This document shows positions 12,701 to 45,064 of a stretch of DNA of 64,000 nt, one piece after another. The notes beneath the pieces are model-generated. The model saw nothing but the letters and a program-made list of their open reading frames with translations. It had not been told where the DNA came from and searched no databases. The DNA is taken from sequence record MF360958.1. One strand, 5' to 3'. Numbering within the stretch: position 1 is the stretch's first letter; each line of letters opens with the position of its first letter. The position numbers and the translations under genes were made by a program.

Positions 12701-15193
12701 ACGTGTTGTTTTACCTAAATTTATATTGCCAATAATTTTATCAAAGACATCACGCACATTTTGCTTATTAATATGCTTATTTTTCATTATATCTTCAGTA
12801 TTTAAAACAATTAGATTTTTAAATGACGAATATGCTCTCATGGAATTATAAATGCTGTCTACAATATCACGAGAGTTGTTATCATTAATAAACATTAAAG
12901 GAACCATAGAATTATCATGCTTTAGTACCTTATTGCCTTTAGAACGATCTTTTACTGTATCTCTGAAATTATTTTCACTTAATGAACTTCCTTTAATATA
13001 GTGTTGATTAAAGATTATTGATCTAAAATGATTAAATATTTCTGTGAATGCAAATTGCTCAACATTTTCGTTCATAGGATTATTAGACAGAGAATCCTGA
13101 ATCATTTGAATTGCTTCATTAGGATAATGTTCAATTCTTTCAAATGTTTCATATTTAACTTCTAAATAATCACCGCTTGATAAATTATCATTTAGTGGAT
13201 AAATTTTTAAATCTTCAAAATAAAAATCTTCATCTTTAATTAATCGATCACCATTTAATTCTACTTCAAAATTATCATTTTTAGGAATAAATTCAAATTC
13301 TAAATGAGGCCGTCCTGAATTAATATCCTCATCATTAAATACTTTTTTCTGTAGAAATGTTGTTAAATTACTGGTTTTTTCTTCCCAAATATCTTTATAT
13401 AATTCATCTTCAATAATATCATCTTCAATAATAATATAACCTGTTTTTGAACCTATAGTATAAGTATAAATATTATTTTCTGATTTATTTTTATCATATG
13501 AAAATTCAATATTTCTTATATTATTTGAATTATCGCCATTAACTTCATCGATAATTTTTTTACCATTACTATCTTTAATAGATATTGAATTATATTTTCC
13601 TGACCATCCTCTCGGGGTTGTAGTTGTATCTGAAAAATCAAATTTATATTGTATATTTTCTTTTAATATTAAGTTAGGTAACTTTTCATCATTAATATAA
13701 ATAGTTGGTTCATCATTTTCATCTTTATGAATAGTAAATAAATAAATATTATCAGATGTTATTTTTTCAGGATTTAACTTTTTATAAAAATGATTATTTA
13801 TTGTATGAGATACACCTCCTGCCTCATAAGAATATTGTTCATCCATAAAGTTTTCAAAAACAATATCAGAAGATTCTTGGAATGTTTTATATAATATATT
13901 CAAATCTAAATATTCATCATAAATTCCATCTTGTATGTCCGTTTTATAAGAAAATATTTTATTTCCTTTAAAATCACTATTCGGATAGCGATAAGGATCA
14001 TTGAGAAGTGTAGCTTTGCTTGAATCATTGTTATCATACAAATTAAATAGTGGTGCTTGTGTTGAATGGATTTTTTGTTGACATTGAATCCAACTATGAG
14101 TTTGTTCATCCCACTTAAATTCATCAGCTTTATAATTACCATCAAGAATTGTTACTTTATAACCATCATTTACTTTATCATATTCTACAAAATTATTACC
14201 ATCATAACGATAGATTTTAGGATTCCCTTCTTGGATTGCTAAGTCATTTACTTGAACAATCACTCCATCTGTTGCTATAGAAAGATTATTAGAAAATAAA
14301 GTTACATATTCATAAGGTGTATTTGAATAATTATAAAGTTCTATGTTTTTATCAAAACATATAATAGGACGTTTAGCTTGGCGTTCTCTACTTGCACTAA
14401 AACGTTCTTGTCCTACTTGTTGGTTCACCACATCTCTATGATACCAACAATTATTACGGCTCCATGGATTATCATCTAGACTTCCTCTTTCCATTGTAAT
14501 GTATTCAGCAGGAAAACGATCAATTAAATCTTGTATTTCATTATCTGCTATTTGAAGTCGATCAATACGTTTAGGTTTATTATTTTCTAAGGAAAATTCT
14601 ATAAGATTTATAAAACGTCCCACACCTTCAACAATGTATTCCTTATCATCATTAAGAATAATATGATGGCCACTACTAAGCATTATGTACTGATTAGATT
14701 CAGTAATCGTTGCTTGATATTGTGTTTTTCCAATAATATCTTCAGGTTGAGCATTAACATGAAAGGCCATAATTCCTTCAGGATACCAATAATAATTATT
14801 AAAGTTTATAAACATATCCATGTCTATAGGAGGGGCATAAGAGTAACTTTTTGAATTAAAAATACGATTATGATCAGATACATATGACCCTTTTGACTCT
14901 AAATTATTAAGTAAATCTTCATAAAACGTAGCAGATTTAATTTCACCACTATCAACATCTTTTATAACAAGTGTTTGTTCGAGTTGATAATCTTCACGAA
15001 TCTTACGATCTTCTTCTGAATAATAATCTTTAAATGGTTGAAACAATCCTCCGGGTGTTCGACCTATGTAAAATGGTACATCTTCGGAATTCTTCGATGT
15101 AAACAACGTTTCAGTTGTTGAATCCATGAAGTTACGGATTTTATTTGTACGAAATTGTCTAGGGAGAAATTGTTTAACATTTTTATTTGTCAT
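3770..15193 (-). CDS. Giant baseplate wedge-like structural protein (3807 aa) with inserted LamG-like and CBM5/12-like domains
   Basis: Size, position and N-terminal FLPRQFRT..YIGR..YQLE..DMFINFNNYYW pattern typical of the very large jumbo-phage baseplate protein; RBS AAGGA upstream. Confidence 0.7.
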   Translation of the reverse strand: MTNKNVKQFLPRQFRTNKIRNFMDSTTETLFTSKNSEDVPFYIGRTPGGLFQPFKDYYSEEDRKIREDYQLEQTLVIKDVDSGEIKSATFYEDLLNNLESKGSYVSDHNRIFNSKSYSYAPPIDMDMFINFNNYYWYPEGIMAFHVNAQPEDIIGKTQYQATITESNQYIMLSSGHHIILNDDKEYIVEGVGRFINLIEFSLENNKPKRIDRLQIADNEIQDLIDRFPAEYITMERGSLDDNPWSRNNCWYHRDVVNQQVGQERFSASRERQAKRPIICFDKNIELYNYSNTPYEYVTLFSNNLSIATDGVIVQVNDLAIQEGNPKIYRYDGNNFVEYDKVNDGYKVTILDGNYKADEFKWDEQTHSWIQCQQKIHSTQAPLFNLYDNNDSSKATLLNDPYRYPNSDFKGNKIFSYKTDIQDGIYDEYLDLNILYKTFQESSDIVFENFMDEQYSYEAGGVSHTINNHFYKKLNPEKITSDNIYLFTIHKDENDEPTIYINDEKLPNLILKENIQYKFDFSDTTTTPRGWSGKYNSISIKDSNGKKIIDEVNGDNSNNIRNIEFSYDKNKSENNIYTYTIGSKTGYIIIEDDIIEDELYKDIWEEKTSNLTTFLQKKVFNDEDINSGRPHLEFEFIPKNDNFEVELNGDRLIKDEDFYFEDLKIYPLNDNLSSGDYLEVKYETFERIEHYPNEAIQMIQDSLSNNPMNENVEQFAFTEIFNHFRSIIFNQHYIKGSSLSENNFRDTVKDRSKGNKVLKHDNSMVPLMFINDNNSRDIVDSIYNSMRAYSSFKNLIVLNTEDIMKNKHINKQNVRDVFDKIIGNINLGKTTRQTFSQTYMFGTYRKFINLEIDNNGKLNEFADTKPINNELYIFTNEGIKIRDIDYEISIDDIVGETKIIPKSFDISDIDEIRYYEDMDPSFCPSTPAKFGLEKPFKPEIIEDDSFKNKQHFIIGHDGSKTPVYSNYNQIEENDLDPRDLILLEFEKRIYNGIDKDFIETEKKYFDYNYLKEGYFRKSSYDLEQFKNTEFNIFHIWSYNNNVNYSKNTQYDEDNPWTYNYSLHGSKLPGHWKGIYEYLYDTHRPDIRPWEMLGFSIKPAWWDNEYGSDYSSNNVQLWNDLEQGIIRQGERSNAENMRYMSVDNIYRRIGLKELIPVKNDGTLKDPVELGLFNNYPTYYNASQPWEYGDLGPVEQSWKRQSDYFYAKQIVHYLLKPLDYINKAWNTFETYSKNSTFFPNVINYEINNQKNNNYVPGVTQWIHDYIRENDESVEDIMIDAFNGINVVLGHKLGGYIDTQNLRIISESYNPRSGNVNSSLPEDDINVFVHESKDIREEVYSGVIIERVAPNRKDLNFIKGELYQKGDIVYISNDDSYYKNVKSLYDYPEWNEKTTYVKNRAVIYNNTIWNCIVDHSPQNIPPTDSNYWELRGFIDSEWALMFDAPDPKYTVFKVYGYDPYGSQFKTIPAKTSGKKKTITSITNESEAIDAKQWEPLTNYEQGEYRTLPNGKLIRALEKHKSGQSFDNEYWTIVENIPYTNIAKTTVGIEGDDSILNVVPYGTTFRNEKDVSEFIIAYGRYLESRGWLFDERDKNRNIYKNWELSVKEFIQWAYENKNEGSVISLSPSSMNIRFKSDHGVPSISRNYNKNKITLLDNRSRIITPSENTFNRENDVFQITPQRPIYYARVNVREYEHAMVINNRTIFSDVLYNPLYGIRKERLQVNARKTKDWNGKLEANGYIILDNRLLPNFESSITDLKTINDMDSISTQYIFNTLKYHNIGFENRSYLENINMDEKSQIQFYSGFIRQKGTSEAFQRILRSNQIEADENMGINEEWAFKEGEFGSLINNQTTEYVLNRMDYISSPQNIILRYNGYGEDITPSYNDILIESSNRDKWLKFPSRFSQYEKIWTEDRLSNLKVMPTAGYVNYYDVDYTAFSLSELNTKIINSGKELQPKQYAWIARDGYSGYGFNVYISQEDKNITVKDIEIYGEEDISSMILRLNNVEENSIYSLYNLGYKYTFTFKRVDENDNLFIALPYDNSTYITLNEDLTKDDLNNSTFIIWKPLRINKFYNTIYNDIQDTIDRFIQKNNIDVFDGLKLFIDSVNSNVSYKQSILESSALEYWTFDNKEDSTFIGHINDISLTTNSDYAFENPNNGLILGDKSLKGGTNYDPSNNNWPQSFWADLGNHLNLSNKEKSIQFWINNGEFSYRYNQSVSTTIASIVGVDLDTSNTYTVQLMVDPPIVGSEWSYKIVYMVNDIIDQELDAIIESGYNQIVLNYKNINGKVHIESFINGLNFEELVSSSVINVDNNVLWYTVIGDSAEPESDMPYIDHVSVYDYALDLKDIQEQYDIALETIKNENKRNRWAVYYFNSGKWNLDYKEQDVIDCNLMKDITVYESNTNNLVTHLNIFDPIKGFYPSSLINYIDYFTEYDPANYHLNDSDNNSYWTDSKVGTLWLDTSKLRYIEYENFDIETRNNLWGSLFPGSEVHVYEWIKTKVLPENIEDQSVILDTTKYTIGSEYDVLTDNYIEYYYYWVKNNINVPETSNRNVNAVDIANSIKYPENNGTGYIQFLRNDIFSIIDINNDLVDNDTVIQINYRLGYNEQSRNHSQWKLLSRNSKEIPEYLFNNMVDSLLGYTEPSDQNPEGLKVPNPNLAPNNRYGNDRVKRQSWFYNAQNARKIFYEVINNVLKYINLWDTDIFWERRVDNVKRDTELYSLVDWYKEDFDPDTIVRNKIKDRNFLNSIPLEDGEHIAVNETAEQNTYINEKTTVIYRYIKEYNTYEKVFQTRSALSFNPIIYKRELTAQEAIEMRRILNVIFNYILIGENKDTIFELFFRLVEQIFVEQPNNDWVYPSTYISINQKTNTLTKSNVYRQNREQQIIDYVNEAKPFHTKLRTINRTHTREPENIGLFVTDFDKPPYLTEDKDQIILQEYVTEKIRYRKNEYYYHKIMNSNPYEYWSMNNIQDNKNIQGLYGNDFILNDNPEIINIEQNEGISYTNNICLSGTSNYSYTNTLKNFETNSFNIEWWFTSPNNLSEGRNSFVLIKFNNNNKVNTIEFVIDVDADNIWQYKVIFVNSLNENIEINLNLIFNNKANYISIGYSNGDIRLYNNNRLASETSIEFLEVLNSDIEVMFGNNNTNDIVCFDEIAIYPRMISKNEAIIHYNAGDIERPQNEFELQKIHDLESIEVYIEDQKLPKDSYQIIGNTLIFNNIVQEPINYYNNITVRSNNLDHINILNNYKNTRGYMSVNQDNLKNWKSTVNQKSSTIVFDRISLLPTFSLEQLLKIKNNIDNSDKPLEKLTNYSLYNHDNPKQTLSEIDRIIIQHHSDLLENIVNETKTIFVNSKTKKNISIDNSHNKDNISVFINDIYINERYYKINTKNGKTNLEFVNKLYKGDVVKVRSKDDYRTLIQKSSEIRGVGIPYHNIDEINELPFVINSNTSPIKLNDNGELIIEQDYIDDLEESNIEPTLVESNSDFNNSSANNIRHNTPFIETSHRGVPEEKSSLNFKESMCVTYKNNLKLVPRGYETSIPLNIFETVTFNSDGTETEYPINLNVHKEQVMVLVNDDEWVMDDEENNIQYHYELRPNKIIFHKSLNYKDKVVITDRYSAFDRYGGNENDDYGINVQGGYDSNMILPNYLNDINNPDHEHAVHEYREFVLYNYSGKVFLFKCDEKDAINVKSHIHPDEHSIELETITDKLKPVNNENGKLLALYASRMNNDKLEHSFVEFIHYKTINNNNRTLEDVKRSIFSTGRKYFDIDKYHVKAYPIDIENQMPQFTILEPYIGINSQRSYPKYGHIMSGKD

Positions 15194-15270: not shown

Positions 15271-16317
15271 TTAAGTTGATCCGCCACAGTATCCTTCAAC
15301 ACAAATATCAATATTTGCTGAATCGCTATTATTAGAATCATACTTTATAACATACTGCTGTGATAACTTAACCCTAAAGTTTTCCATCGTTGTTGTCAAT
15401 TCATTAGCTGTATTAACATTATCATAATCACCATTTGTTTCATCAGCAATTTGTTTAAATACATTTTCATCAAAATTAGAACCAAAAGCAATTAAAAATA
15501 CTGGTATGGATGCATTTTTTGCTGAATCGATAGCATCTTGTAATGTATTATTTGAACTCCCATCGTTACCATCAGTTATTACCATTAACGCATTTTGCCG
15601 ACTGCTGGATTTTATTTCATTCACAGCTGTAATAATTGAATCATATAATGCGGTTGAACTTCCTACATCCGATGGGTTATTAATTGCATCTTTTAGATCA
15701 GATGCATTACTAGTTAAACTTTGATCAAGAGAAGCATCACCTCCGAAATTAATTATTGCTGCTTTATCAGAACTATTTAATTTATCTATTAGATTCGATG
15801 CACCTGTATTCATATCGGATTGGTAATCTGAAAATGATCCAGATCTATCTAGAGATATACCAATATCAACAAATTTATTTAAATCACCACTTGTTGAAAA
15901 TGTATAATTAGATATTTCAGAACCATTCTCAGTAACACCACAAATATCTTCACTTGTTATATCAGTAACAGACTCCCCCGTGTCGGGATCAATTACATCA
16001 AAATAAACTTCTGTTGTAGAGCCACTATTAATTTTCTCAATTTGTCTAATTTTGACGCCTTCTCCAACTACAGATATTGTTTTTGATATTGATGTAGAAT
16101 CAACAGTTGCTGTTAATGTTAATTGTTCATTTAATATGTCTGTTGAAACAGTAAGATTGCCTTGCGAATCCACTGTTCCTATACTATTACTAGTAGACCA
16201 TGAATCTACATTGATATCATCGCTTATTGTACCATCACCTTCTCGTTTTAAAACATTATATTGATGGCTGCTTCCTGCACAAATTCTTTTTGGACCATCT
16301 AAAATTAAATTACTATA
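15271..16317 (-). repeat. vWA module copy 2 (C-terminal); direct repeat of 18220..19272
   Basis: Near-identical DNA to copy 1 at a 2955-bp offset. Confidence 0.95.
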
Positions 16318-19300
16318 TAATATTTGTATATCTTTACTATCGTTTATTTCCCCATCACTAATATTAATTGTTATTACATCCTGATTGTTTGAGTTATTAC
16401 TATCAGGGGTTTCTAATGTAACCGTATCACCGCTTACTGAAACAGAACCTATATTACTTGAAACACTGTAATTTTTAGTAGAATCATAATTAGTGATTGT
16501 ATATTCATAGGTTTTGTTGGATTCAACGGGATCAGGCCCATCTAATAATATTCCATCATAAAGATAGGTCACATCTTTACTACCATTAACTCTACCATCA
16601 GTTATATCAATTGTGATTGTTCTTTCTTCAAAATTACTATTAGGGGTTTCTAATGTAACCGTATCGCCATTAACTGAAACACTTCCTATATTACTTGACA
16701 CATTGTAATTTTTAGTAGAATCATAATTAGTGATTGTATATTCATAGGTCTTATTGGACTCAACGGGATCTGGTCCATCTAATAATATCTCATCATATAG
16801 ATAGGTCACATCTTTACTACTATTTACTGTGCCATCAGTTATATCAATTGTGATTGTTTTATTGCTATCGTTACTATCAGGAGTTTCTAATGTCACTGTA
16901 TCGCCATTTACTGAAACATTTCCTATATTAGTTGAAACACTATAATTTTTGGTAGAATCATAATTAGTAATCGTATATTCATAGGTTTTGTTGGATTCAA
17001 CGGGATCTGGTCCATCTAATCCTATGTCATTATATAGATAGGTCACATCTTTACTACTATAAACATCCCCATCATTTATATTAATTGTGATTGTTCTTTC
17101 TTCAAAATTACTATTAGGGGTTTCTAATGTAACCGTATCGCCATTAACTGAAACACTTCCTATATTACTTGACACAATGTAATTTTTAGTAGAATCATAA
17201 TTAGTGATTGTATATTCATAGGTCTTATTGGATTCAACCGGATCCGGCCCATCTAATAGTATTTCGTCATATAATAACTGTACATTTTTACTACCATTTA
17301 CTGTTCCATCAGTTATATCAATTGTGATTGTTTTAGTTGAATCATTATTATTAGGGGTTTCTAATGTCACTGTATCACCACTTACTGAAACAGAACCTAT
17401 ATTACTTGACACATTGTAATTTTTAGTAGAATCATAATTTGTGATTGTATAGTAATATGTATTATCTGTTAAAACATTATTTGGTCCATCTAATAATATC
17501 TCATCATATAGATAAGTCACATCGTGTTTACTTGAAACATCTCCATCAGTTATATCAATTGTGATTGTTTTAGTTGAATCATTACTATTAGGGGTTTCTA
17601 ATGTCACTGTATCACCACTTACTGAAACAGAACCTATATTAGTTGAAACAGTGTAATTTTTACTAGGAAAATAATTAGTGATTATATATTCATAGATTTT
17701 ATTGGATTCAACTGGGTCTGGGCCATCTAATTTTATGTCATCATATAGATAAGTCACATCGTGTTTACTTGAAACATCTCCATCAGTTATATCAATTGTG
17801 ATTGTTTTAGTTGAATCATTACTATTAGGGGTTTCTAATGTCACTGTATCACCACTTACTGAAACATTTCCTATATTAGTTGAAACACTATAATTTTTAG
17901 TAGAATCATAATTAGTGATTGTATATTCATAGGTCTTATTGGATTCAACTGGATCCGGGCCATCTAATAGTATTTCGTCATATAATAACTGTACATCTTT
18001 ACTACCATTTACTGTACCATCAGTTATATCAATTGTGATTGTTTTAGTTGAATCATTATTATCAGGGGTTTCTAATGTCACTGTATCATCATTAACTGAA
18101 ACAGAACCTATATTACTTGACACATTGTAATTTTTATTTGGTTGATAATTAGCAATAATGTAATTATAAGTATTAGATGGTTTGACAAATTCTGGACCAT
18201 TCAATAAAATCTCATCATAAACATAAGAATTTGATCCACCACAATATCCTTCAACACAAATATCAATATTTGCTGAATCAGTATTATTAGAATCATATTT
18301 TATAACATACTGTTGTGACAATCTAACCCTAAAGTTTTCCATCGTTGTTGTCAATTCATTAGCTGTATTAACATTATCATAATCACCATTTGTTTCATCA
18401 GCAATTTGTTTAAATACATTTTCATCAAAATTAGAACCAAAAGCAATTAAAAATACTGGTATAGATGCATTTTTTGCTGCGTCTATAGCATCTTGTAATG
18501 TGTTATTTGAATTGCCATCGTTACCATCAGTTATTACCATTAACGCATTTTGCCGACTGCTGGATTTTATTTCATTCACAGCTGTAATAATTGAATCATA
18601 TAATGCGGTTGAACTTCCTACATCTGAAGGACTATTAATTGCATCTTTTAGATGGGATGCATTACTAGTTAAACTTTGATCAAGAGAAACATCGCCTCCG
18701 AAATTAATTATTGCTGCTTTATCAGAACTATTTAATTTATCTATTAGATTCGATGCACCTGTATTCATATCGGATTGATTATTTGAGAATGATCCAGATC
18801 TGTCTAGAGATATACCAATATCAACAAATTTATTTAAGTCGCCACTTGTTGAAAATGTATAATTAGATATTTCAGAACCATTCTCAGTAACACCACAAAT
18901 ATCTTCACTTGTTATATCAGTAACGGATTCACCTGTGTCGGGATCAATTACATCAAAATAAACTTCTGTTGTAGAGCCACTATTAATTTTCTCAATTTGT
19001 CTAATTTTGACGCCTTCTCCAACTACAGATATTGTTTTTGATATTGATGTAGAATCAACAGTTGCTGTTAATGTTAATTGTTTACCTGATGTGTCTGGTT
19101 TTATACTAACATTACCTTGCGAATCCACTGTTCCTATACTATTACTAGTAGACCATGAATCTACATTAATATCATCGCTTATTGTACCATCACTATGTTT
19201 AAGAGATAGGTTATATTGATGAGTGCTTCCTACACAAATTCTTTCTGGACCATTTAATAATATTTCATCATATAAGTAAGTTATATCTTTACTACCATTA

Positions 19301-22300
19301 ACTCTACCATCGGTTATATCAATTGTGATTGTTTTTTCATTATCATCAAAATTACTATCAGGGGTTTCTAATGTAACAGTATCGCCATTAACTGAAACAC
19401 TTCCTATATTACTTGAAACAGTGTAATTTTTACTAGAATCATAATTAGTAATTGTATATTGATAACTATTATTGGATTTGACGGTATCAGGTCCGTCCAA
19501 TAATATTTCATCATATAAGTAAGTTATATCTTTACTACCATTTACTGTACCATCAGTTATATCAATTGTAATTGTTTTAGTTGAATCATTACTATTAGGG
19601 GTTTCTAATGTAACCGTATCACCACTTACTGAAACACTTCCTATATTACTTGAAACATTGTAATTTTTAGTAGGTTCATAATTAGTGATTGTATATTCAT
19701 AGGTCTTATTGGACTCAACGGGATCTGGTCCATCTAATAATATCTCATCATATAGATAAGTTACATTATGATCACTAAATACAGTCCCGTCATTTATTTC
19801 AATAGTAATTGTTTTCTCTTCAAAATTACTTTCAGGAGTTTCTAATGTAACCGTTTCGCCATTTATTGAAACAGAACCTATATTACTTGAAACACTGTAA
19901 TTTTTGGTAGAATCATAATTAGTGATTGTATATTCATAAATTTTGTTGGATTCAACCGGTTCTGGGCCATCTAATAATATATCGTCATAGAGATAAGTCA
20001 CATCATGTGTACTATGAACCCAACTATCATTTATTTCAATAGTAATTGTTTTCTCTTCAAAATTACTTTCAGGAGTTTCTAATGTAACCGTATCACCACT
20101 GATTGAAACAATGCCTATATTAGTTGAGACATTGTAATTTTTACTAGGGAAATAATTAGTAATTGTATATTCATAGGTTTTGTTGGATTCAACGGGATCA
20201 GGCCCATCTAATAATATTTCATCATATTTTATAGGATCTACAGTAATGCAACGCACCGTATTAGTATGTCGTTCAAATGTCCATAACTCATAACCATTTG
20301 GATGGATTTTCTTTGCTGTTCTATCATTTGATGCACTATATATGTTAGTTTTATAGTCAGTTTCTAATCCATATACAACACTATTATGACCATCATAAGA
20401 CCATATTTCATTTCCACGAGGATCAAGTTTCTTAATTGTTTCATCAATGGAAGCACTGTAAATATTTTCATTATGGTCAGTAGCTACATCAAGTATTGCC
20501 GCTGAATGGCCAGTAAATGACCATAATTCATCGCCATCTAAGCTTATTTTACGTACTGTATTATCTAATGAACCACTAAATAAATATGCATCATAATAAT
20601 GCAACGCAAGACAACGAATACCATTTGTATGTTCTTCGTATGACCAAAGTTTTTCAGCTATTGAATTTAATTTTCTAATTGATCCATCTTTTGAACCTGT
20701 ATAAACATTTCCATCTTTATCAATATCAATAGCCCATATTTCATCATTATGACCATAATAAGTCCATATATGTTCACCGTTTGATTTTAATTTTTTAACA
20801 GTAGTATCTTTTGAACCTGTATAAACATTCCCTTCATCATCTACGACAACTTTATATATATTATCATTATGACCATAATAAGTCCATATTTTATTAAAAT
20901 CATTATCAAATTTTTCTACTATGTCATCTCTACTGCCAGTATAAATATTTCTATCTTTATCAATATCAATAGAATAATTAGTATTTGGACTAGAACTGTG
21001 AGAGTAAATTTCATAACCATTATTATCTAATTTACGAATAGTATTATCAAATGAAGCGGTATAAATGTTTATACCATTAGCATATTCTATATCATAAGTA
21101 TATTCTGTAGAAACATTTTCATCTGATATTGTTATTGTCGTTGCATCTACTGTATTTAAATCAGTTAAATCAACAATAAGCTCATCTTCATTTATAGTTG
21201 CATTACCTATTGAAGCAGATGCTTGATAATTTCGATGTGGTTCATGATTTATAATTTTATATTTATAAATCTCTCCGGCTTGCAATACATCTGGCCCTTG
21301 TAATATAATATCATCATATAGATAAGTTACTGTATGGTCAGAATATACTTTTCCATCATCTATACTAATAGTTAAATTTCGTTCTTCTGTATTATAATCT
21401 GGTGTTTTTAAAGTAATTTTATCATTATTAATACTTATATTTCCTATATTAGATGATACATTATAGGACTGACTAGAATAATAATTCACTATGGTATAAG
21501 TATATTCTTTATCGGATTTGACAGGATCAGGACCATCAATTTTTATTTCATCATAAGAACCATCACCTTTAACATTATATTGATATTGTGTTGAAATATG
21601 TTGATCAGTAATAATTACGTTAGCAATATCGGTTAATCTTACATTAGTTAAATCTAATGTAAGAACATCTTCTGAAACTGAAACTTCGCCTAAATCTGTA
21701 GTAGCACTGTAATCTCGCTGAGGGAAATAATTATCAATGGTATATGTATAAACATTTCCAGCATCAAGATTATCTGGACCAATAAGTATAATTTTGTCAT
21801 AATCTTCATGATCATCAACATTATAACTATAATCTGTTGACACATAGCCATCAGTAATCGTAATATCTACAATACCTCCTAGAGTAAATCCTTTAAGATC
21901 TAAAATTAATTTATCATCTTTAATTTCAACATCACCCATTGATGTTACCGCATTATAAACTTTATTAGGATCATAATTATCAATGGTATATGTATAGATA
22001 TTCCCCACTTGTAATTGTTGAGGACCAACAAGTATAATTTTGTCATACTCATTTGTTACTACTACAGGGTTAACAGCCACATCGTATACAGGGGCTGTAT
22101 GCCCTTTGTATTCCCAAATAATACTGTTTCCATAAGGCTCAAATTTTCGTACTATGTGATCCTCGGAGCCTGTATAAATATTTGAATTTTCATCGACAGA
22201 TAATGCCCATATATTATGTTCTAATTTATCATATGACCATATAAAAGTACCTTGATTATCATACTTTCTAATACGATCATCATGTGATACGATATAGAAA

Positions 22301-24561
22301 TTATCTTCATTATCAATTTCTATATCACGTATAGAATGGTAATCTTGAGTTTCTATATCCCATAATTTATCACCATTAGAATTAATTTTATGAATCTCAT
22401 TATCAAAAGAAGCACTAAATATATTATTATTACTATCTACTGCTAAGCCTGTAACCGTATTATTGTGAATACCATAGATCCAAATATCATTTCCATTTTT
22501 ATCTATTTTTCTTATGGTTTTATCAGAACTGCTAATGTAATTATTATAATCAAAATCTAAAATAATATCTCTTATTCTACTATTATTTTTTTCATAAACC
22601 CATAGTTCATTTCCATTGGCGTCTATTTTTCTAACTGTATTGTCAAAAGAACCGCTATATATATTTTTATCTTCATCAACAGTTAAAGTCCAAATAATAT
22701 CCATATGCCCTTTAAATGTCCATAGTAAATTTCCATAAACATCTAGCTTTTTAATTGTATGATCGGCAGACCCACAATAAATATTTCCGTAATTATCAAT
22801 ATCAATACACCATACTGTGTTTATAAAACCACCATAACTCCATAATAATTGACCATGCATATCTAACTTTTTAACAGTATTATCAGCAGATACACTATAA
22901 ACAGCACCATTTAAATCTTTAACTAGTTGTTTTTCTACATCATAATCGTATTCAGTAGATAATATATCATTTGAAATAGTTAGATTTAATACATCAGGAG
23001 AAGTTATATTTGTTAAATCAACAGTTATTTTTTCACCATCAATGGTAATATCGCCAATATTACTATTGACTTCATAATTAGAATTTAAATCATAATTATC
23101 AATTGTAAGTGTGTATATATTTCCTGCTTGAAAAATTTGAGGACCATTTAATATAATATCATTTTTATCTAGATACATAATATTATAAGAGTATTTTGTA
23201 GAAACATTAACATCCGATATAGTTATTTCTACAGTATTTTCATTATTAATATTTGTTAAGTCTAATTTTATTTCATCATGTTCAATTATCGCATTTCCTA
23301 CGTTAGTAGTAACATTATATTGTCTATTATAATTGTAATTATATATATATAAACTATTAACTTTACCAGCTATGAGTGTTTTTGACAGAGGATGTAATAT
23401 GATATCATCATAAAGAAAAGTAACATTATGTGTTTTATAAGAATCTTCGTTATCAACAATAATAGATATTATTTGCTCATTATTATTTTCAGATGGAGTT
23501 TCCAAAGTCAACTTATCTTGAGACAAAGAGACTTTGCCTATATTCGTTGAAACATTGTAATTTTTTAATGAATCATAATTTGTTATTATAAATTCATAAC
23601 TATTATTTGATTTTACAGAATTAGGTCCATCAATAACAATTTCATTATAGTCAAATGCAACAGTATGATTTGAAGTTATAGATCCATCAGTTATTGTTAT
23701 AACAATCTCAGTTTCAGAACGATTACCTGAAGGAGTTTTTATAATAACCCTGTTTTCATCAATTGCACTTTGACCAATATTTGTACTTACTGTGTATGTT
23801 TTATTTGGATCGTAATTAGCTATAGTAAACTCATATGTTTTAATTGATTCAACTCTTTCAGGACCATTTAGAACTATTTCATTATATCCAGTTACACCAT
23901 TGACTGATATAATATAATTAGATGTATAAGATTCTGTTGTTATTGTTAATATTAAATTATTATTAACGCTACTTGGAACATCAATATTAATAGTATCTCC
24001 ATCCAGTGTTGCTGTTCCTTCACTAATCGAAATATTATAATTAGCAAAACTGTTATAGTTTGTTATTGTATATTGATAGCTATTTCCTGTATTAACACTC
24101 ACAGGGCCATTTAATGAAGGGCGAAATTCATTCTCAATATTATTAATATGGAAACGGCTCCAGTGTATTTCACCTTTATCGTTCGTTCCAACTAAAGTTT
24201 TGGGTTCTCTAGTTATACTAACCGGGATGTCTTCATTGATGTCGGTTATTTTATTTTTAATTATATTTGTGTCTACATAATTATCAGCATAAGCTTTATT
24301 GATAAGAGACTTATTATCATCAAAATCAGTAACTTTAAGATAACCTTTCATAACATTGTTATCTTCATGAAGATAACGTTCATATAAATCTTCTAGAGTA
24401 TGATCATGAATACGTTCAGCATAAATGTTTTTGTTATTATATTTGCCAGCCAGTATCCCAAAATCCACAATATCATCTATATAATGATAATGTTCATTAG
24501 CAATATCTTCATGAATTATTCTTTCACCATTAATTTTAGAGTCTTTTATTATTCGCCCCAT
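15271..24561 (-). CDS. Giant modular adhesin/fibre-like protein (3096 aa): about 21 Ig-like repeats, 2 seven-bladed beta-propellers, 2 vWA modules
   Basis: Repeats directly visible in protein and DNA; vWA MIDAS motifs DRSGS, TALYD, TDG present twice; lies within the late structural operon. Confidence 0.85.
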   Translation of the reverse strand: MGRIIKDSKINGERIIHEDIANEHYHYIDDIVDFGILAGKYNNKNIYAERIHDHTLEDLYERYLHEDNNVMKGYLKVTDFDDNKSLINKAYADNYVDTNIIKNKITDINEDIPVSITREPKTLVGTNDKGEIHWSRFHINNIENEFRPSLNGPVSVNTGNSYQYTITNYNSFANYNISISEGTATLDGDTINIDVPSSVNNNLILTITTESYTSNYIISVNGVTGYNEIVLNGPERVESIKTYEFTIANYDPNKTYTVSTNIGQSAIDENRVIIKTPSGNRSETEIVITITDGSITSNHTVAFDYNEIVIDGPNSVKSNNSYEFIITNYDSLKNYNVSTNIGKVSLSQDKLTLETPSENNNEQIISIIVDNEDSYKTHNVTFLYDDIILHPLSKTLIAGKVNSLYIYNYNYNRQYNVTTNVGNAIIEHDEIKLDLTNINNENTVEITISDVNVSTKYSYNIMYLDKNDIILNGPQIFQAGNIYTLTIDNYDLNSNYEVNSNIGDITIDGEKITVDLTNITSPDVLNLTISNDILSTEYDYDVEKQLVKDLNGAVYSVSADNTVKKLDMHGQLLWSYGGFINTVWCIDIDNYGNIYCGSADHTIKKLDVYGNLLWTFKGHMDIIWTLTVDEDKNIYSGSFDNTVRKIDANGNELWVYEKNNSRIRDIILDFDYNNYISSSDKTIRKIDKNGNDIWIYGIHNNTVTGLAVDSNNNIFSASFDNEIHKINSNGDKLWDIETQDYHSIRDIEIDNEDNFYIVSHDDRIRKYDNQGTFIWSYDKLEHNIWALSVDENSNIYTGSEDHIVRKFEPYGNSIIWEYKGHTAPVYDVAVNPVVVTNEYDKIILVGPQQLQVGNIYTYTIDNYDPNKVYNAVTSMGDVEIKDDKLILDLKGFTLGGIVDITITDGYVSTDYSYNVDDHEDYDKIILIGPDNLDAGNVYTYTIDNYFPQRDYSATTDLGEVSVSEDVLTLDLTNVRLTDIANVIITDQHISTQYQYNVKGDGSYDEIKIDGPDPVKSDKEYTYTIVNYYSSQSYNVSSNIGNISINNDKITLKTPDYNTEERNLTISIDDGKVYSDHTVTYLYDDIILQGPDVLQAGEIYKYKIINHEPHRNYQASASIGNATINEDELIVDLTDLNTVDATTITISDENVSTEYTYDIEYANGINIYTASFDNTIRKLDNNGYEIYSHSSSPNTNYSIDIDKDRNIYTGSRDDIVEKFDNDFNKIWTYYGHNDNIYKVVVDDEGNVYTGSKDTTVKKLKSNGEHIWTYYGHNDEIWAIDIDKDGNVYTGSKDGSIRKLNSIAEKLWSYEEHTNGIRCLALHYYDAYLFSGSLDNTVRKISLDGDELWSFTGHSAAILDVATDHNENIYSASIDETIKKLDPRGNEIWSYDGHNSVVYGLETDYKTNIYSASNDRTAKKIHPNGYELWTFERHTNTVRCITVDPIKYDEILLDGPDPVESNKTYEYTITNYFPSKNYNVSTNIGIVSISGDTVTLETPESNFEEKTITIEINDSWVHSTHDVTYLYDDILLDGPEPVESNKIYEYTITNYDSTKNYSVSSNIGSVSINGETVTLETPESNFEEKTITIEINDGTVFSDHNVTYLYDEILLDGPDPVESNKTYEYTITNYEPTKNYNVSSNIGSVSVSGDTVTLETPNSNDSTKTITIDITDGTVNGSKDITYLYDEILLDGPDTVKSNNSYQYTITNYDSSKNYTVSSNIGSVSVNGDTVTLETPDSNFDDNEKTITIDITDGRVNGSKDITYLYDEILLNGPERICVGSTHQYNLSLKHSDGTISDDINVDSWSTSNSIGTVDSQGNVSIKPDTSGKQLTLTATVDSTSISKTISVVGEGVKIRQIEKINSGSTTEVYFDVIDPDTGESVTDITSEDICGVTENGSEISNYTFSTSGDLNKFVDIGISLDRSGSFSNNQSDMNTGASNLIDKLNSSDKAAIINFGGDVSLDQSLTSNASHLKDAINSPSDVGSSTALYDSIITAVNEIKSSSRQNALMVITDGNDGNSNNTLQDAIDAAKNASIPVFLIAFGSNFDENVFKQIADETNGDYDNVNTANELTTTMENFRVRLSQQYVIKYDSNNTDSANIDICVEGYCGGSNSYVYDEILLNGPEFVKPSNTYNYIIANYQPNKNYNVSSNIGSVSVNDDTVTLETPDNNDSTKTITIDITDGTVNGSKDVQLLYDEILLDGPDPVESNKTYEYTITNYDSTKNYSVSTNIGNVSVSGDTVTLETPNSNDSTKTITIDITDGDVSSKHDVTYLYDDIKLDGPDPVESNKIYEYIITNYFPSKNYTVSTNIGSVSVSGDTVTLETPNSNDSTKTITIDITDGDVSSKHDVTYLYDEILLDGPNNVLTDNTYYYTITNYDSTKNYNVSSNIGSVSVSGDTVTLETPNNNDSTKTITIDITDGTVNGSKNVQLLYDEILLDGPDPVESNKTYEYTITNYDSTKNYIVSSNIGSVSVNGDTVTLETPNSNFEERTITININDGDVYSSKDVTYLYNDIGLDGPDPVESNKTYEYTITNYDSTKNYSVSTNIGNVSVNGDTVTLETPDSNDSNKTITIDITDGTVNSSKDVTYLYDEILLDGPDPVESNKTYEYTITNYDSTKNYNVSSNIGSVSVNGDTVTLETPNSNFEERTITIDITDGRVNGSKDVTYLYDGILLDGPDPVESNKTYEYTITNYDSTKNYSVSSNIGSVSVSGDTVTLETPDSNNSNNQDVITINISDGEINDSKDIQILYSNLILDGPKRICAGSSHQYNVLKREGDGTISDDINVDSWSTSNSIGTVDSQGNLTVSTDILNEQLTLTATVDSTSISKTISVVGEGVKIRQIEKINSGSTTEVYFDVIDPDTGESVTDITSEDICGVTENGSEISNYTFSTSGDLNKFVDIGISLDRSGSFSDYQSDMNTGASNLIDKLNSSDKAAIINFGGDASLDQSLTSNASDLKDAINNPSDVGSSTALYDSIITAVNEIKSSSRQNALMVITDGNDGSSNNTLQDAIDSAKNASIPVFLIAFGSNFDENVFKQIADETNGDYDNVNTANELTTTMENFRVKLSQQYVIKYDSNNSDSANIDICVEGYCGGST
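16318..18219 (-). repeat. Tandem array of 8 Ig-like units (237 bp / 79 aa; last unit 81 aa)
   Basis: Consensus YDEILLDGPDPVESNKTYEYTITNYDSTKNYxVSSNIGSVSVxGDTVTLETPxSNxxxKTITIDITDGxVxxSKDVTYL; 1902 bp = 7x237 + 243. Confidence 0.95.
18220..19272 (-). repeat. vWA module copy 1 (Ig-like + linker + vWA, 351 aa)
   Basis: Near-identical to 15271..16317. Confidence 0.95.
19273..20226 (-). repeat. Tandem array of 4 Ig-like units
   Basis: 954 bp = 3x237 + 243; same consensus as the 8-unit array. Confidence 0.95.
20230..21075 (-). repeat. Seven ~40-aa WD40/PQQ-like blades (beta-propeller 2)
   Basis: Repeat [IV]YTGSxDxT[VI][RK]K[LI]xxxGxxxWxYxGHxxx[IV]xx[IV]x[IV]DxxxN x7; 120-bp DNA periodicity at 20691/20811/20931. 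Confidence 0.9.
22065..22915 (-). repeat. Seven ~40-aa WD40/PQQ-like blades (beta-propeller 1)
   Basis: Same blade consensus x7, from GAVYSVSADNTVKKLD to VYDVAVNP. Confidence 0.9.
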
Positions 24562-24562
24562 A

Positions 24563-26551
24563 TTATATTAGTCTCCATAGAGAATTTTCTTTATAATCAT
24601 AAATATATAGATATCCATATCTATCCGTTCCAAGAGGATAATCATATGGTTCTTTATATTCAAAATAGTGTTTATATTCTCCTATTTTCTGAAAAGATTC
24701 CATTTCGGGGTAATATTCATAAAAATTATGATCTTTATCCTCATAATTATCTTCACCCCCAAATATAAAGAATTTATCATCATGTTTAACACTATTATGA
24801 AAAATCTTATTTATATCAGTATTATTATTTATAACTTTCCAACTACCATGTATAATATGATATTTCCAAAAAATACTACCTCTATTACTATTAACCAAAA
24901 CATCACTATCAAAAGAATAATTCATACCATGTACATAAATACGACCTTTATAATATTCACATATATGTCCTTTTAATGAATTTTTAAAAGGTATTGGTGA
25001 AGAATGCTTTCTCCACGTATCGGTGTTTATATCATATTCATAAATATAATCATTAAAAACATTATTTGAAATAGATTCCATTCCTCCAACTAAATAGATA
25101 TGATTTATGCCATCTGTTGTGACATCATGATATATGGTATTAATTGGAAGATTATTCATTTTTTGAAATCCAGTATTATAACGATTTATACGAAACATAA
25201 CACTAGATGCTTCTAAACCATTACTAGATGAATCATTATAGTTGTTACTACCCCCAATTACATATATGTAATCCCCAATAACTGTCATTTTACAAAAGGC
25301 TGTAAAAAAATCACTTTGCGGAGGTTCATTTAACAAATTTTCCCATTTATTATTATAAATGTCATACTTATACACTTTAAAACGGTATTGTGATCCTGTA
25401 TTTTGTATACCAGTTAAATATAAGAAATTAAACTCTTTATCAATAGCTATATCACCATATTTCAAATCTTCAGGTCCATCGTTTTCAAGTGTTTTTTTCC
25501 AAATTTCATCAAGCATTGTGGGAGGACTGGAATTTAATGTTGTATTATTTAAATACCCTATAAAATCAATATTAAAATCCACAGCATTTCCATTTTTAAT
25601 TACTGTTAATGTGACATGCCTGTTATCATTTATTTCATTGACACTTATATTAATTGTGTCACCATTAATAGATGCATTACCATCTGTGATACGCACACTA
25701 TAATTAGAAAACACATCATAATCAGTAATAGTATACGTATAATTTCCACCAGAAATTATTCTTCTAGGGCCATCAAGAGAAATATTTTCTGTTAGACTTG
25801 GTTTAAATTGTAACCAACTGCGATCAATTATACCTTGATTATTTGTTTTTATAATTCCATAAGGTAATGACTTTTCAACTATAGGATGGCTTTTTAACCA
25901 TTTATAAGGCTCATATTTTTTTATTGAACTTATTTCTCCTGAAGAATTAGTTATTATTTCTGCAATAATATATTTATTTGAAGTGTTTTGAAAATAATTT
26001 TTATTCAACGTTATATCTACAACATCATTTTTTTGATCATATTCAATGACAACATAAATTTTTAAATTATTAATATTACTAAGATTGGTTATATCTAATT
26101 TTTTATATGATATATGATATTCACGTCCTTTTATAAAAATATAACAAGAATATATTTCAATATTAACATTATTAGTTTTATTGATATCAAAACTATAACT
26201 ATCTATAGATACATATGGGTTATAAGTTAAATATGTTGGATTATTTTTATAAATATAGTCTTCAAAATATTTTTTATTAATAGCTGAATCTGGATCAGAT
26301 TCAATCACATTATCAACTAACAAATTGCCTTCTACTTCATCTCCTAGAATATTAATAAAATTATCTTCGAAATCATTGAAATGATAACCGTCTAATCCAT
26401 CTACATTAAGATTTTCACCGGGACCATCATCTTTTATAGCACTAGAACCGCTTCCTATTATTTGTGAACTATCATGCGTATGTAATGATTTGGTTTTATG
26501 TGTAATGATTTCAAAACCACCTATAGTCGAACCTTTTCTTAAATTAGACAT
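24563..26551 (-). CDS. Fibre-like protein with one Ig-like unit and a C-terminal Kelch-repeat propeller
   Basis: 662 aa; Kelch motifs YIYVIGG, IYLVGG..YEYDINTDTW, GRIYVHG, KFFIFGG; N-terminal motifs shared with the 3096-aa protein. Confidence 0.75.
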   Translation of the reverse strand: MSNLRKGSTIGGFEIITHKTKSLHTHDSSQIIGSGSSAIKDDGPGENLNVDGLDGYHFNDFEDNFINILGDEVEGNLLVDNVIESDPDSAINKKYFEDYIYKNNPTYLTYNPYVSIDSYSFDINKTNNVNIEIYSCYIFIKGREYHISYKKLDITNLSNINNLKIYVVIEYDQKNDVVDITLNKNYFQNTSNKYIIAEIITNSSGEISSIKKYEPYKWLKSHPIVEKSLPYGIIKTNNQGIIDRSWLQFKPSLTENISLDGPRRIISGGNYTYTITDYDVFSNYSVRITDGNASINGDTINISVNEINDNRHVTLTVIKNGNAVDFNIDFIGYLNNTTLNSSPPTMLDEIWKKTLENDGPEDLKYGDIAIDKEFNFLYLTGIQNTGSQYRFKVYKYDIYNNKWENLLNEPPQSDFFTAFCKMTVIGDYIYVIGGSNNYNDSSSNGLEASSVMFRINRYNTGFQKMNNLPINTIYHDVTTDGINHIYLVGGMESISNNVFNDYIYEYDINTDTWRKHSSPIPFKNSLKGHICEYYKGRIYVHGMNYSFDSDVLVNSNRGSIFWKYHIIHGSWKVINNNTDINKIFHNSVKHDDKFFIFGGEDNYEDKDHNFYEYYPEMESFQKIGEYKHYFEYKEPYDYPLGTDRYGYLYIYDYKENSLWRLI

Positions 26552-44638: not shown

Positions 44639-45064
44639 ATGAAAAATATTTATAAAAACGACACGCATAGAATATCTGTACTAGATGATAATAAGGAAAC
44701 AAAGAAAGAAAAAAAGAAAAAAGAAAATAATAGAAAAAGAAAAAAAGTCGAAAAGGGTGGTGTAGAATACGGTCAAGATAAACATCTCATTGCTACGGAC
44801 TCTGAATCTATATCAAAGATAGTTTCAACAGCAAATGCATTAGACCAAGGCATCATTTCAAAAATTAAGTGGAAAGCAATGAATGGTTGGATAAATAATG
44901 TGGATTCAACAACCATGATGGACATATCTACAATTGTTACAAAACACATTCAAGAATCTTTTAGCACAGAACGCGAGATTGAAGAGTTTATTGATACATT
45001 AACAGAAGATGAGTTAGATCAATTAAATATTGAAGATGAATGGAATAAGCGTTTTGGATATTAA
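44639..45064 (+). CDS. DUF4376-like protein (tail fibre-associated)
   Basis: WKAMNGWINNVD..MMDISTIVTKHIQESFSTEREIEEFI matches the DUF4376 pattern WK..D/N..HVQ.CF..E. Confidence 0.55.
   Translation: MKNIYKNDTHRISVLDDNKETKKEKKKKENNRKRKKVEKGGVEYGQDKHLIATDSESISKIVSTANALDQGIISKIKWKAMNGWINNVDSTTMMDISTIVTKHIQESFSTEREIEEFIDTLTEDELDQLNIEDEWNKRFGY

What the first reader, a model, noticed from the sequence alone, without database searches (positions are those of the whole stretch)
15271..24561. 3096-aa phage-encoded giant adhesin with eukaryote/bacterial-style adhesion domains
Architecture read directly from the sequence: fibre-type N-terminal anchor, 5 Ig-like units, 7-blade propeller, 4 Ig, 7-blade propeller, 4 Ig, vWA module, 8 Ig, vWA module. 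Intact MIDAS motifs (DRSGS/T/TDG) imply metal-dependent ligand binding as in integrin I domains and pilus adhesins. This looks like a bacterial biofilm adhesin grafted onto a virion anchor, with four binding heads along a long stalk. I do not know of a characterised phage fibre with this layout. It may bind EPS, S-layer, mucus or particles rather than the infection receptor.
Basis: partly seen in the sequence, partly recalled or inferred. Interest (0 to 1): 0.82.

Follow-up and report, generated by a model that had tools for sequence, protein, structure and literature searches.

The report
Giant beaded adhesin of jumbo phage
A 440-kb phage from a salt pond encodes an intact 3,096-residue protein in which a small conserved phage module is extended by 21 Ig-like spacers, two seven-bladed propellers and two metal-site vWA modules; it is most likely a very long sticky appendage of the virus particle, and no other sequence found has this layout.

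Summary
Window 15271-24561 (minus strand) is one intact ORF, gp141 of Salicola phage SCTP-2 (MF360958), deposited as 'hypothetical protein'.

New here: the first 227 residues (N-domain plus one Ig unit) are a complete protein of 223-230 aa in the relatives. In the syntenic locus of the closest long metagenomic contig, a 229-aa protein sits where gp141 sits. So about 2,870 residues were added to a small conserved protein.

The same N-domain heads two other SCTP-2 proteins, gp142 (Kelch propeller) and gp438 (six Ig units plus a propeller). The gene lies in a tightly packed block with a conserved giant virion structural protein and a tail-fibre connector homologue. The two vWA copies are under strong purifying selection (dN/dS 0.09).

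Best reading: a virion-anchored, roughly 100-nm beads-on-a-string accessory adhesion fibril with four binding heads. Presence in virions and actual binding are inferred, not shown. The N-domain matches no characterised fibre anchor. The only similar architecture found is the paralogue gp442. I rate it a new variant of a known kind (Ig-bearing phage appendages and giant bacterial adhesins).

The parts
15271..24561 (-). gp141 (ASV44156.1), intact 3096-aa ORF including its stop codon; 344 kDa, pI 4.2
24124..24561 (-). N-domain (residues 1-146): conserved phage-specific module with an invariant HxH and a connector motif; the presumed docking part
   Evidence: No known family or structure matches it. 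Model pLDDT is below 50.
22924..24123 (-). Ig-like units 1-5 (residues 147-546). Unit 1 is the one that the short relatives share.
   Evidence: The model of unit 1 is a beta-sandwich with pLDDT about 70-80 and generic Ig/PKD/Rib matches.
22042..22923 (-). Seven-bladed WD40/PQQ-like beta-propeller 1 (residues 547-840)
21076..22041 (-). Ig-like units 6-9 (residues 841-1162)
20221..21075 (-). Seven-bladed WD40/PQQ-like beta-propeller 2 (residues 1163-1447); 39% identical to propeller 1
19273..20220 (-). Ig-like units 10-13 (residues 1448-1763); 237-bp tandem array
18214..19272 (-). vWA module 1 (residues 1764-2116): divergent Ig-like domain, small beta-sandwich, then the vWA domain (about 1906-2083) with a complete MIDAS
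16318..18213 (-). Ig-like units 14-21 (residues 2117-2748); 237-bp tandem array, units 71-92% identical in DNA
15274..16317 (-). vWA module 2 (residues 2749-3096), the distal end of the protein; 92-95% identical in DNA to module 1; complete MIDAS
24563..26551 (-). gp142, 662 aa: the same N-domain (with an insertion of about 110 aa), one Ig unit and a Kelch propeller. Its stop codon lies 1 nt before the gp141 start.
3770..15193 (-). gp140, 3807 aa: conserved giant virion structural protein of this jumbo-phage group, immediately downstream of gp141
92..1690 (-). gp137, 532 aa: homologue of the long-tail-fibre proximal connector (phrog_1154); last gene of the same-strand block examined

Best explanation
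gp141 is most likely an accessory adhesion fibril of the SCTP-2 virion.

- Anchor: the conserved N-domain (residues 1-146), which gp142 and gp438 also carry, docks the protein on the particle, probably at the tail, baseplate or neck.
- Stalk: 21 phage-specific Ig-like units plus two divergent ones form a flexible beads-on-a-string stalk, probably one chain wide. Its length is of the order of 100 nm, estimated from typical sizes of Ig-like domains.
- Heads: four globular heads sit along the stalk, two seven-bladed WD40/PQQ-like propellers in the proximal half and two vWA modules in the distal half, one of them at the tip.
- Binding: each vWA head would hold a divalent cation in its MIDAS site. 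An acidic group of a ligand on a cell surface or polymer would complete the coordination. The propellers would add further binding faces.
- Effect: several weak, reversible contacts would widen the capture radius of a very large, slowly diffusing particle in Mg-rich brine.

Shown: the anatomy, the graft onto a small conserved protein, purifying selection, and the neighbourhood of structural genes. Inferred: presence in the virion, site of attachment, oligomeric state, ligand and dependence on cations.
For: - The ORF is intact and has the stated modules.
- Relatives of the N-domain are 223-230 aa proteins that equal gp141 residues 1-227. Others have two Ig units (318 aa), or one Ig unit plus a propeller-like region that has no Pfam match (651-669 aa), or at least three Ig units (782 aa). 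The module therefore carries distal parts of varying size.
- Synteny in L002: a Kelch protein 38% identical to gp142, then a 229-aa protein, then a giant protein 54% identical to gp140.
- L004 and L006 have the same gene order, but the slot holds 669 aa in one and 223 aa in the other.
- The gp141 and gp142 N-terminal families are homologous (hhalign probability 99.8%, E 1.7e-29). gp438 is a third bearer in SCTP-2.
- Neighbours: gp140 is annotated as a virion structural protein in the records of PA5oct, Atu_ph07 and CBB-type phages. In Atu_ph07 it lies next to the baseplate wedge gene. gp137 is a tail-fibre connector homologue. In other relatives the cassette lies near genes for gp13-, gp15- and gp6-like proteins and a Collar-domain protein.
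- gp141 has no signal peptide or membrane segment, as expected for a part assembled in the cytoplasm.
- vWA module: model pLDDT 88. The fold matches ITIH1, ArnB, BatB, vWF A3, integrin I domains and the vWA-bearing pilin PilB. The MIDAS residues are invariant in 28 aligned sequences.
- The two vWA copies have dN/dS 0.086.
- Related jumbo phages carry hair-like whiskers whose genes have not been assigned (PMC6102473).
Against: - There are no proteomic or imaging data for SCTP-2 in the library searched.
- The N-domain has no detectable relation to any characterised fibre, whisker or baseplate protein, and its monomer model is unreliable.
- The closest relatives do without the extension, so it cannot be essential to the lineage.
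- The sigma-70-type promoter scan was uninformative in this AT-rich DNA, and the 8-mer seen upstream of gp142 is too common there to date expression.
- vWA domains also act inside cells, for example as co-chaperones of MoxR ATPases in jumbo phages (PMC7824862).
Confidence: 0.6

Rival explanations
1. gp141 is the primary receptor-binding long tail fibre. Its distal vWA module recognises the Salicola receptor and is needed for infection.
For: It lies in a block with a tail-fibre connector homologue and a baseplate-associated giant protein. Its distal tip is a ligand-binding domain with an intact MIDAS.
Against: The orthologous slot in the nearest relatives holds only the N-domain plus one Ig unit. 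The recently duplicated, interspersed heads and a single-chain Ig stalk are unlike known trimeric receptor-binding fibres (my own knowledge). Two further N-domain proteins and gp442 offer alternative heads.
Confidence: 0.15
2. gp141 is a neck or head decoration (a whisker, in the manner of T4 fibritin or Hoc). It would serve particle stability, fibre handling or prevention of aggregation in brine, rather than binding to surfaces.
For: In L002 the cassette follows a T4 gp13-like neck gene. In Atu_ph07 the hairs appear mostly capsid-associated (PMC6102473). gp99, which also carries these Ig units and propellers, lies just downstream of the major capsid gene.
Against: Intact MIDAS sites kept under strong purifying selection, together with propellers, point to ligand binding. 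In SCTP-2 the nearest structural neighbours are baseplate- and fibre-type genes.
Confidence: 0.12
3. gp141 is not a virion part. It would act inside the infected cell, or as a soluble protein freed at lysis, for example as a scaffold or chaperone partner, or by coating debris or cells.
For: vWA domains serve as co-chaperones in group 2.2 jumbo phages (PMC7824862). There is no direct evidence that gp141 is in particles.
Against: The vWA module is of the secreted bacterial type (TIGR03436-like; its relatives have hydrophobic N-termini). A stalk of 23 Ig-like domains has no obvious role inside a cell. The N-domain family is confined to phage-like contigs, next to tail and neck genes.
Confidence: 0.1
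4. The giant ORF, or its repeat count, is an artefact of assembling repetitive DNA.
For: There are 237-bp tandem arrays and two copies of about 1 kb that are 92-95% identical.
Against: The units differ by 8-29% in DNA, enough for unique placement. The frame is open throughout. Differences between the copies are mostly synonymous (26 synonymous against 9 non-synonymous), which is the mark of real coding sequence. The paralogue gp442 has a comparable array.
Confidence: 0.03

Closest known systems
SCTP-2 paralogues gp142 (662 aa), gp438 (1038 aa), gp442 (3456 aa) and gp99 (1735 aa)
   Same: They carry the same phage-specific Ig-like unit (1, 6, 15 and 2 copies) joined to beta-propellers. gp142 and gp438 also share the N-domain.
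   Different: None has vWA modules. gp442 and gp99 have other N-termini. Stalk lengths and propeller types differ: Kelch, Mal s 1-like, RCC1, SBBP.
Ig-like decorations of phage particles (T4 Hoc; Big_2, I-set and FN3 domains on tails and heads; adherence-to-mucus model; gut-phage modular adhesins, PMC13370021)
   Same: Ig-like domains are displayed on a virion part and are thought to give weak, reversible adhesion (my own knowledge).
   Different: Those proteins have a few Ig domains and no propellers or vWA modules. The gp141 unit matches none of the Pfam Ig families above threshold. gp141 is about eight times longer than Hoc (my own knowledge).
Giant bacterial RTX / BIg adhesins (LapA, SiiE, MpIBP, FrhA, the Aeromonas RTX adhesin; PMC7493085, PMC12077191)
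   Same: They have a long stalk of tandem beta-sandwich repeats with ligand-binding modules set into it. LapA-type proteins include a vWA domain (my own knowledge). They are acidic and depend on cations.
   Different: gp141 has no RTX repeats, no type I secretion signal and no N-terminal retention module. It has a phage N-domain instead, and there is no sequence relation between the repeats.
Secreted bacterial vWA proteins of the TIGR03436 (acidobact_VWFA) / BatA-BatB type, and metagenomic protein P0013
   Same: The same three-part module: beta-sandwich, vWA domain with MIDAS, and closing strands. P0013 is 42% identical to gp141 and also combines propeller-like repeats with the module.
   Different: These are free-standing proteins of 300-560 aa with signal or anchor segments. 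gp141 scores 67.8 bits, below the family cut-off of 81.25. gp141 carries two copies inside a phage protein.
vWA-tipped pili (Streptococcus sanguinis PilB, 7b7p; RrgA-type tip adhesins)
   Same: A vWA domain with MIDAS is presented at the end of a filament as the adhesive head (my own knowledge).
   Different: Those filaments are polymers of pilins, not one chain. The shared vWA fold is the only relation seen.
Hair-like whiskers of related jumbo phages (vB_PcaM_CBB, Atu_ph07)
   Same: They belong to the same broad phage group. Thin long appendages are seen on the tail or capsid (PMC6102473).
   Different: The genes for those hairs are not assigned. No homologue of the gp141 N-domain or vWA module was found in those genomes.
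Integrin alpha subunits
   Same: The same domain vocabulary: a seven-bladed propeller, a vWA (I) domain with MIDAS and an Ig-like stalk.
   Different: gp141's propellers are WD40/PQQ-like, not FG-GAP. Its vWA domains are separate modules, not inserted into a propeller. The resemblance is convergent, not a matter of descent.

Membership tests
vWA domain (Pfam VWA_2 PF13519 / VWA_3 PF13768) | Profile score above the curated cut-off | tested here: met
   VWA_2 62.6 bits and VWA_3 53.9 bits against a cut-off of 27; two stretches each
vWA domain | Complete MIDAS (DxSxS ... T ... D) | tested here: met
   D1920 S1922 S1924 T1985 D2012 and D2905 S2907 S2909 T2970 D2997. These columns are invariant in 28 aligned sequences.
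vWA domain | Alpha/beta Rossmann-like fold | tested here: met
   Model pLDDT 88, pTM 0.82. Foldseek probability 1.00 to ITIH1, ArnB, BatB, vWF A3 and integrin I domains.
vWA domain | Metal-dependent ligand binding | not testable with these tools
   Needs a structure with a bound cation or ligand
TIGR03436 acidobact_VWFA | Score above the NCBIfam cut-off over the whole domain | tested here: not met
   67.8 bits against a cut-off of 81.25, although profile positions 12-296 of 324 are covered. It is related but not a member by the curated rule.
WD40-type beta-propeller | Profile score above the cut-off, and seven repeats per propeller | tested here: met
   WD40 115.9 bits against 27. Seven repeats with a 40-41 aa period in each propeller. 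PDB 2ymu at E 1.7e-50.
Integrin alpha chain | FG-GAP propeller with the I domain inserted between blades | tested here: not met
   No FG-GAP match. The vWA modules are separated from the propellers by Ig arrays.
Known phage Ig-like families (Big_2, I-set, FN3, PKD) | Profile match above threshold | tested here: not met
   Only Ig_5 appears, at 30.8 bits with no single stretch passing. A profile of the 21 units finds nothing in PDB sequences.
Ig-like beta-sandwich fold (in the general sense) | Seven to nine strand sandwich | tested here: inconclusive
   The model of unit 1 has pLDDT about 70-80 and eight strands. Foldseek probabilities are 0.96-1.00 but E is only about 0.01 to ICAM, PKD, Rib and titin domains. 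A canonical unit was not modelled.
Characterised phage fibre, whisker or baseplate anchors (T4 gp34-37, gp9-12, fibritin and others) | Detectable similarity of the N-terminus to a characterised anchor | tested here: not met
   No Pfam family, no PHROG with a function, no PDB hit. tblastn finds no other phage.
RTX / type I secreted giant adhesins | C-terminal RTX repeats with secretion signal, and an N-terminal retention module | tested here: not met
   No such Pfam matches. The C-terminus is the second vWA module.
phrog_8401 ('beta-propeller repeat protein') | Profile match | tested here: met
   6049.9 bits over residues 1-2702. The profile evidently includes this protein, so the match says nothing about function.
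Virion structural protein | Detected in purified particles | not testable with these tools
   No SCTP-2 proteome in the library. The only evidence is neighbourhood.

The most novel reading that the evidence does not exclude
The N-domain is a general docking adaptor of one lineage of jumbo phages, and almost any distal 'cargo' can be fused to it. In SCTP-2 this produced a single-chain tether over 100 nm long with an integrin-like vocabulary (propellers, MIDAS vWA heads, Ig stalk). The tether would use the molar Mg2+ of saltern brine to hold the particle to surfaces other than the infection receptor, such as exopolymers, particles or non-host cells. That would be a hypersaline counterpart of phage adherence to mucus, built from bacterial adhesin parts.
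Probability: 0.25. Interest if true: 0.8.

Novelty: new variant of a known kind. Interest (0 to 1): 0.6.

Why it matters
If gp141 is in the virion, it would be the longest and most elaborate single-chain adhesive appendage that I know of described for a phage. It would also be a clear case of bacterial adhesin modules (a secreted-type vWA module and repetitive propellers) being recruited onto a phage docking module.

The series of 223, 318, about 660, 782, 1038 and 3096 residues on one N-domain gives a natural set of cases for how phage appendages grow by tandem duplication and module insertion. It also gives candidate genes for the unassigned 'hairs' of jumbo phages.

The sequence itself is already public, as a hypothetical protein. 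What is new is the reading of it, and that reading still needs particle-level evidence.

Tried and rejected
1. No function or fold could be assigned to the N-domain. Pfam, PHROGs, NCBIfam and PDB sequence searches, with single sequences and with profiles, gave nothing. The AlphaFold model built from 9 sequences has pLDDT below 50 for residues 16-146.
2. Foldseek on that model gave only generic Ig-like matches for unit 1.
3. Searches for more relatives gave little:
   - The full-length word-based search found only gp442.
   - The profile search with A2 added one 318-aa protein.
   - IMG/VR gave one locus, L008.
   - The scan with the Ig-array protein and the JGI metagenome and GTDB genome scans with A6 found nothing.
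   - Three other calls failed because the alignments had no conserved stretch to search with.
4. Promoter evidence was uninformative. The sigma-70-type scan means little in 28% G+C DNA. An AT-rich 8-mer read upstream of gp142 occurs 31 times in the window, mostly inside genes, so I dropped it.
5. A link from the insertion in the gp142-type N-domain to the C-terminus of a 'putative virion structural protein' of Erwinia phage Deimos-Minion is only marginal: tblastn through L008 gave E about 1e-6, and hhalign gave probability 54%. gp141 lacks that insertion, so I treat this as a lead only.
6. Integrin-type and RTX-type membership were considered and rejected.
7. The assembly-artefact reading was rejected because of the divergence between units and the excess of synonymous differences.

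Full report
**What is there.** Window 15271-24561 holds a single minus-strand ORF of 3096 codons with an ATG start and no internal stop or frameshift. The DNA is about 28% G+C. At that composition stop codons should occur about every 12 codons, so the open frame is real coding sequence. The plus strand across the interval has only 63-72 aa ORFs. The window is 100% identical to Salicola phage SCTP-2 (MF360958.1), a 440,001-bp jumbo myovirus from an Italian solar saltern. The ORF is gp141 (ASV44156.1), deposited as 'hypothetical protein'. The papers that mention SCTP-2 use its genome only for phylogeny and size comparisons, and none discusses this gene.

**Anatomy.**
- N-domain, residues 1-146
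- five units of 79-82 aa, 147-546
- propeller, 547-840
- four units, 841-1162
- propeller, 1163-1447
- four units, 1448-1763
- vWA module, 1764-2116
- eight units, 2117-2748
- vWA module, 2749-3096

Each propeller has seven repeats with a 40-41 aa period. The propellers score above threshold for WD40 and match a bacterial WD40 propeller structure, 2ymu, at E 1.7e-50. They are 39% identical to each other.

Each vWA module is itself tripartite: a divergent Ig-like domain, a small beta-sandwich, and the vWA domain closed by C-terminal strands. All five MIDAS positions are present in both copies, and they are invariant across 28 aligned sequences.

The protein is 344 kDa with pI 4.2. It has no hydrophobic N-terminus or membrane segment.

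**The repeat unit.** A profile of the 21 units matches nothing in PDB sequences. No Pfam Ig family matches above threshold. The model of unit 1 is an eight-strand sandwich with pLDDT of about 70-80. It gives generic Ig, PKD, Rib and titin matches with high probability but weak E-values. 'Ig-like' is therefore a reasonable description, not a family assignment.

**The graft.** The exhaustive search with residues 1-149 found only eight other proteins. Five of them are 223-230 aa long and align end to end with gp141 residues 1-227, that is, the N-domain plus one unit. Other relatives are:
- 318 aa, with two units
- 651-669 aa, with one unit plus a propeller-like region that has no Pfam match
- 782 aa, with at least three units

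On metagenomic contig L002 (29% G+C) the gene order is: a Kelch protein (38% identical to gp142), a 229-aa protein (aligning to the first ~230 residues of gp141, 41-46% identity by method), then a giant protein (54% identical to gp140). This is the SCTP-2 order, with a short protein in gp141's place. Two other contigs, L004 and L006, share the same gene order, but the slot holds 669 aa in one and 223 aa in the other. So about 2,870 residues of gp141 are an addition to a small conserved protein, and the size of this slot varies among relatives.

Within gp141, units 1-9 are old (52-64% DNA identity to one another). Units 10-21 are 71-92% identical, and the two vWA modules are 92-95% identical. 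These figures indicate recent tandem growth of the distal half.

**A family of N-domain proteins.** Profile comparison shows that the N-terminus of gp142 and its relatives is homologous to the gp141 N-domain plus unit 1. The gp142 form has an insertion of about 110 aa (probability 99.8%, E 1.7e-29).

I scanned the pieces of the SCTP-2 record one by one, without joining them. The N-domain occurs in three ORFs:
- gp141
- gp142, which ends in a Kelch propeller
- gp438, with six units and a Mal s 1-like propeller

The unit occurs in five ORFs: 21, 1, 6, 15 and 2 copies in gp141, gp142, gp438, gp442 and gp99. The only large protein resembling gp141 among about 5.8 billion clusters is gp442, which has a different N-terminus. 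That search is limited to proteins 0.55-1.75 times the query length that share short words with it. With the patterns used, the N-domain was not found in 185,579 species genomes or in JGI metagenome contigs.

**Neighbourhood.** gp142, gp141, gp140, gp139, gp138 and gp137 lie on one strand with gaps of 0-77 bp. The stop of gp142 and the start of gp141 are 1 nt apart, and a GGAG lies 11 nt upstream of the gp141 start.

gp140 has homologues in 93 jumbo-phage records. The PA5oct, Atu_ph07 and CBB-type records annotate them as virion structural proteins. In Atu_ph07 the homologue follows the baseplate wedge gene. gp137 matches the long-tail-fibre proximal connector family over its whole length (E 2.9e-70).

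In relatives the cassette lies beside a T4 gp13-like neck gene (L002), gp15-like and gp6-like genes (L008), or DUF4376 and Collar-domain genes (L004 and L006).

**The vWA module.** Its relatives are bacterial proteins of 300-560 aa with hydrophobic N-termini, several of them named 'Ca-activated chloride channel homolog' or 'VWFA-related'. The module covers nearly the whole TIGR03436 profile but scores below its cut-off. The best relative, P0013 (42% identity), also joins propeller-like repeats to this module.

The model is confident (pLDDT 88). It matches ITIH1, ArnB, BatB, vWF A3, integrin I domains and the vWA-bearing pilin PilB. No other phage among 50,697 records has this module by tblastn. 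Other viral vWA proteins exist, but none sits on such a stalk.

Between the two copies there are 26 synonymous and 9 non-synonymous differences in 261 codons (dN/dS 0.086). Units 10-21 have a median dN/dS of 0.34. Both vWA heads are therefore being kept functional.

**Most likely mechanism (confidence 0.6).** gp141 is a virion-anchored accessory adhesion fibril.
- The N-domain docks on the particle, probably at the tail, baseplate or neck.
- The Ig-like units form a flexible stalk of the order of 100 nm. This is an estimate from typical domain sizes (my own knowledge).
- The two propellers and two vWA heads give multivalent, reversible binding. The MIDAS cation would be completed by an acidic group of the ligand, as in integrin I domains and vWA pilus adhesins (established knowledge of the vWA family).
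- For a very large, slowly diffusing particle in Mg-rich brine, such a tether would enlarge the capture radius.

What is shown: the anatomy, the graft, the selection and the structural-gene neighbourhood. What is inferred: presence in the virion, the attachment site, the oligomeric state, the ligand and the cation dependence.

**Rivals.**
- A primary receptor-binding fibre (0.15). The short orthologues in the nearest relatives weigh against it.
- A neck or head whisker with a non-adhesive role (0.12).
- A non-virion protein (0.10). The secreted-type vWA module and the restriction of the N-domain to tail and neck gene neighbourhoods argue against it.
- An assembly artefact (0.03). The divergence between units and the excess of synonymous differences argue against it.

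**Comparison and novelty.** In function the nearest analogues are the Ig-like decorations of phage particles and the giant RTX/BIg adhesins of bacteria. gp141 fails the defining tests of the integrin, RTX and known phage-fibre families, and it is not a member of any of them. It is a member only at the level of domains (vWA, WD40). I rate it a new variant of a known kind. The sequence is public, but the reading is new: a conserved docking module carrying a recently expanded, four-headed adhesin.

**Limits.**
- The N-domain remains without fold or function.
- The habitats of the relatives are unknown.
- The gene is intact, so there are no breaks to count.

I stopped once I noticed.

Noticed in passing
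window 3770-15193 (-): gp140 is a 3807-aa ORF directly downstream of gp141. It has homologues in 93 jumbo-phage records (PA5oct, Atu_ph07, CBB, GAP32 and others), annotated there as virion structural proteins. In Atu_ph07 the homologue follows the baseplate wedge gene. It may be the platform on which the N-domain proteins dock.
   Followed up: partly
window 24563-26551 (-): gp142 has the same N-domain as gp141 (with an insertion of about 110 aa), one Ig unit and a Kelch propeller. In contigs L004 and L006 a 333-aa N-domain protein and a separate 545-aa Kelch protein occupy this place.
   Followed up: yes
MF360958.1 about 349.7-352.8 kb (+) and 354.0-364.4 kb (-); L010: gp438 (1038 aa) has the N-domain, six Ig units and a Mal s 1-like propeller. 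gp442 (3456 aa) has 15 Ig units plus RCC1 and WD40 propellers on a different N-terminus. They lie close together, near a TnsA-like (head completion type) gene.
   Followed up: partly
MF360958.1 88936-94143 (+); L012 39936-45143: gp99 (1735 aa) carries two of the same Ig units plus SBBP and WD40/PQQ propellers. It lies a few genes downstream of the major capsid protein gene, so it is a possible head-associated member of the same toolkit.
   Followed up: no
L004/L005 5796-7238 (-) compared with window 26703-28187 (+): In the metagenomic relatives the helicase gene next to the cassette has Hint/intein domain hits. The SCTP-2 counterpart (gp143, UvsW homologue, 494 aa) was not searched for such hits.
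   Followed up: no
MF360958.1 gp224, gp267, gp534 (L015, L019): Three separate CDS of 694, 297 and 130 aa are annotated 'terminase large subunit' in the deposited record.
   Followed up: no
L020 (Erwinia phage Deimos-Minion gp19, C-terminal ~120 aa): The insertion found in gp142-type N-domains resembles the C-terminus of a 'putative virion structural protein' that is widespread in Erwinia, Pseudomonas and Xanthomonas jumbo phages. The search with the L008 protein hit 52 records in all. The support is marginal (hhalign probability 54%).
   Followed up: partly
whole window and all SCTP-2 loci: G+C is uniformly 23-37% (28-30% overall), and the giant genes are no exception. So the adhesin modules are not recent imports from a donor of different composition. 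The closest vWA relative, P0013, sits on a contig with 44% G+C.
   Followed up: partly
window 44639-45064 (+): A 141-aa ORF resembles (27% identity) the DUF4376 protein that follows the N-domain gene in contigs L004 and L006.
   Followed up: no
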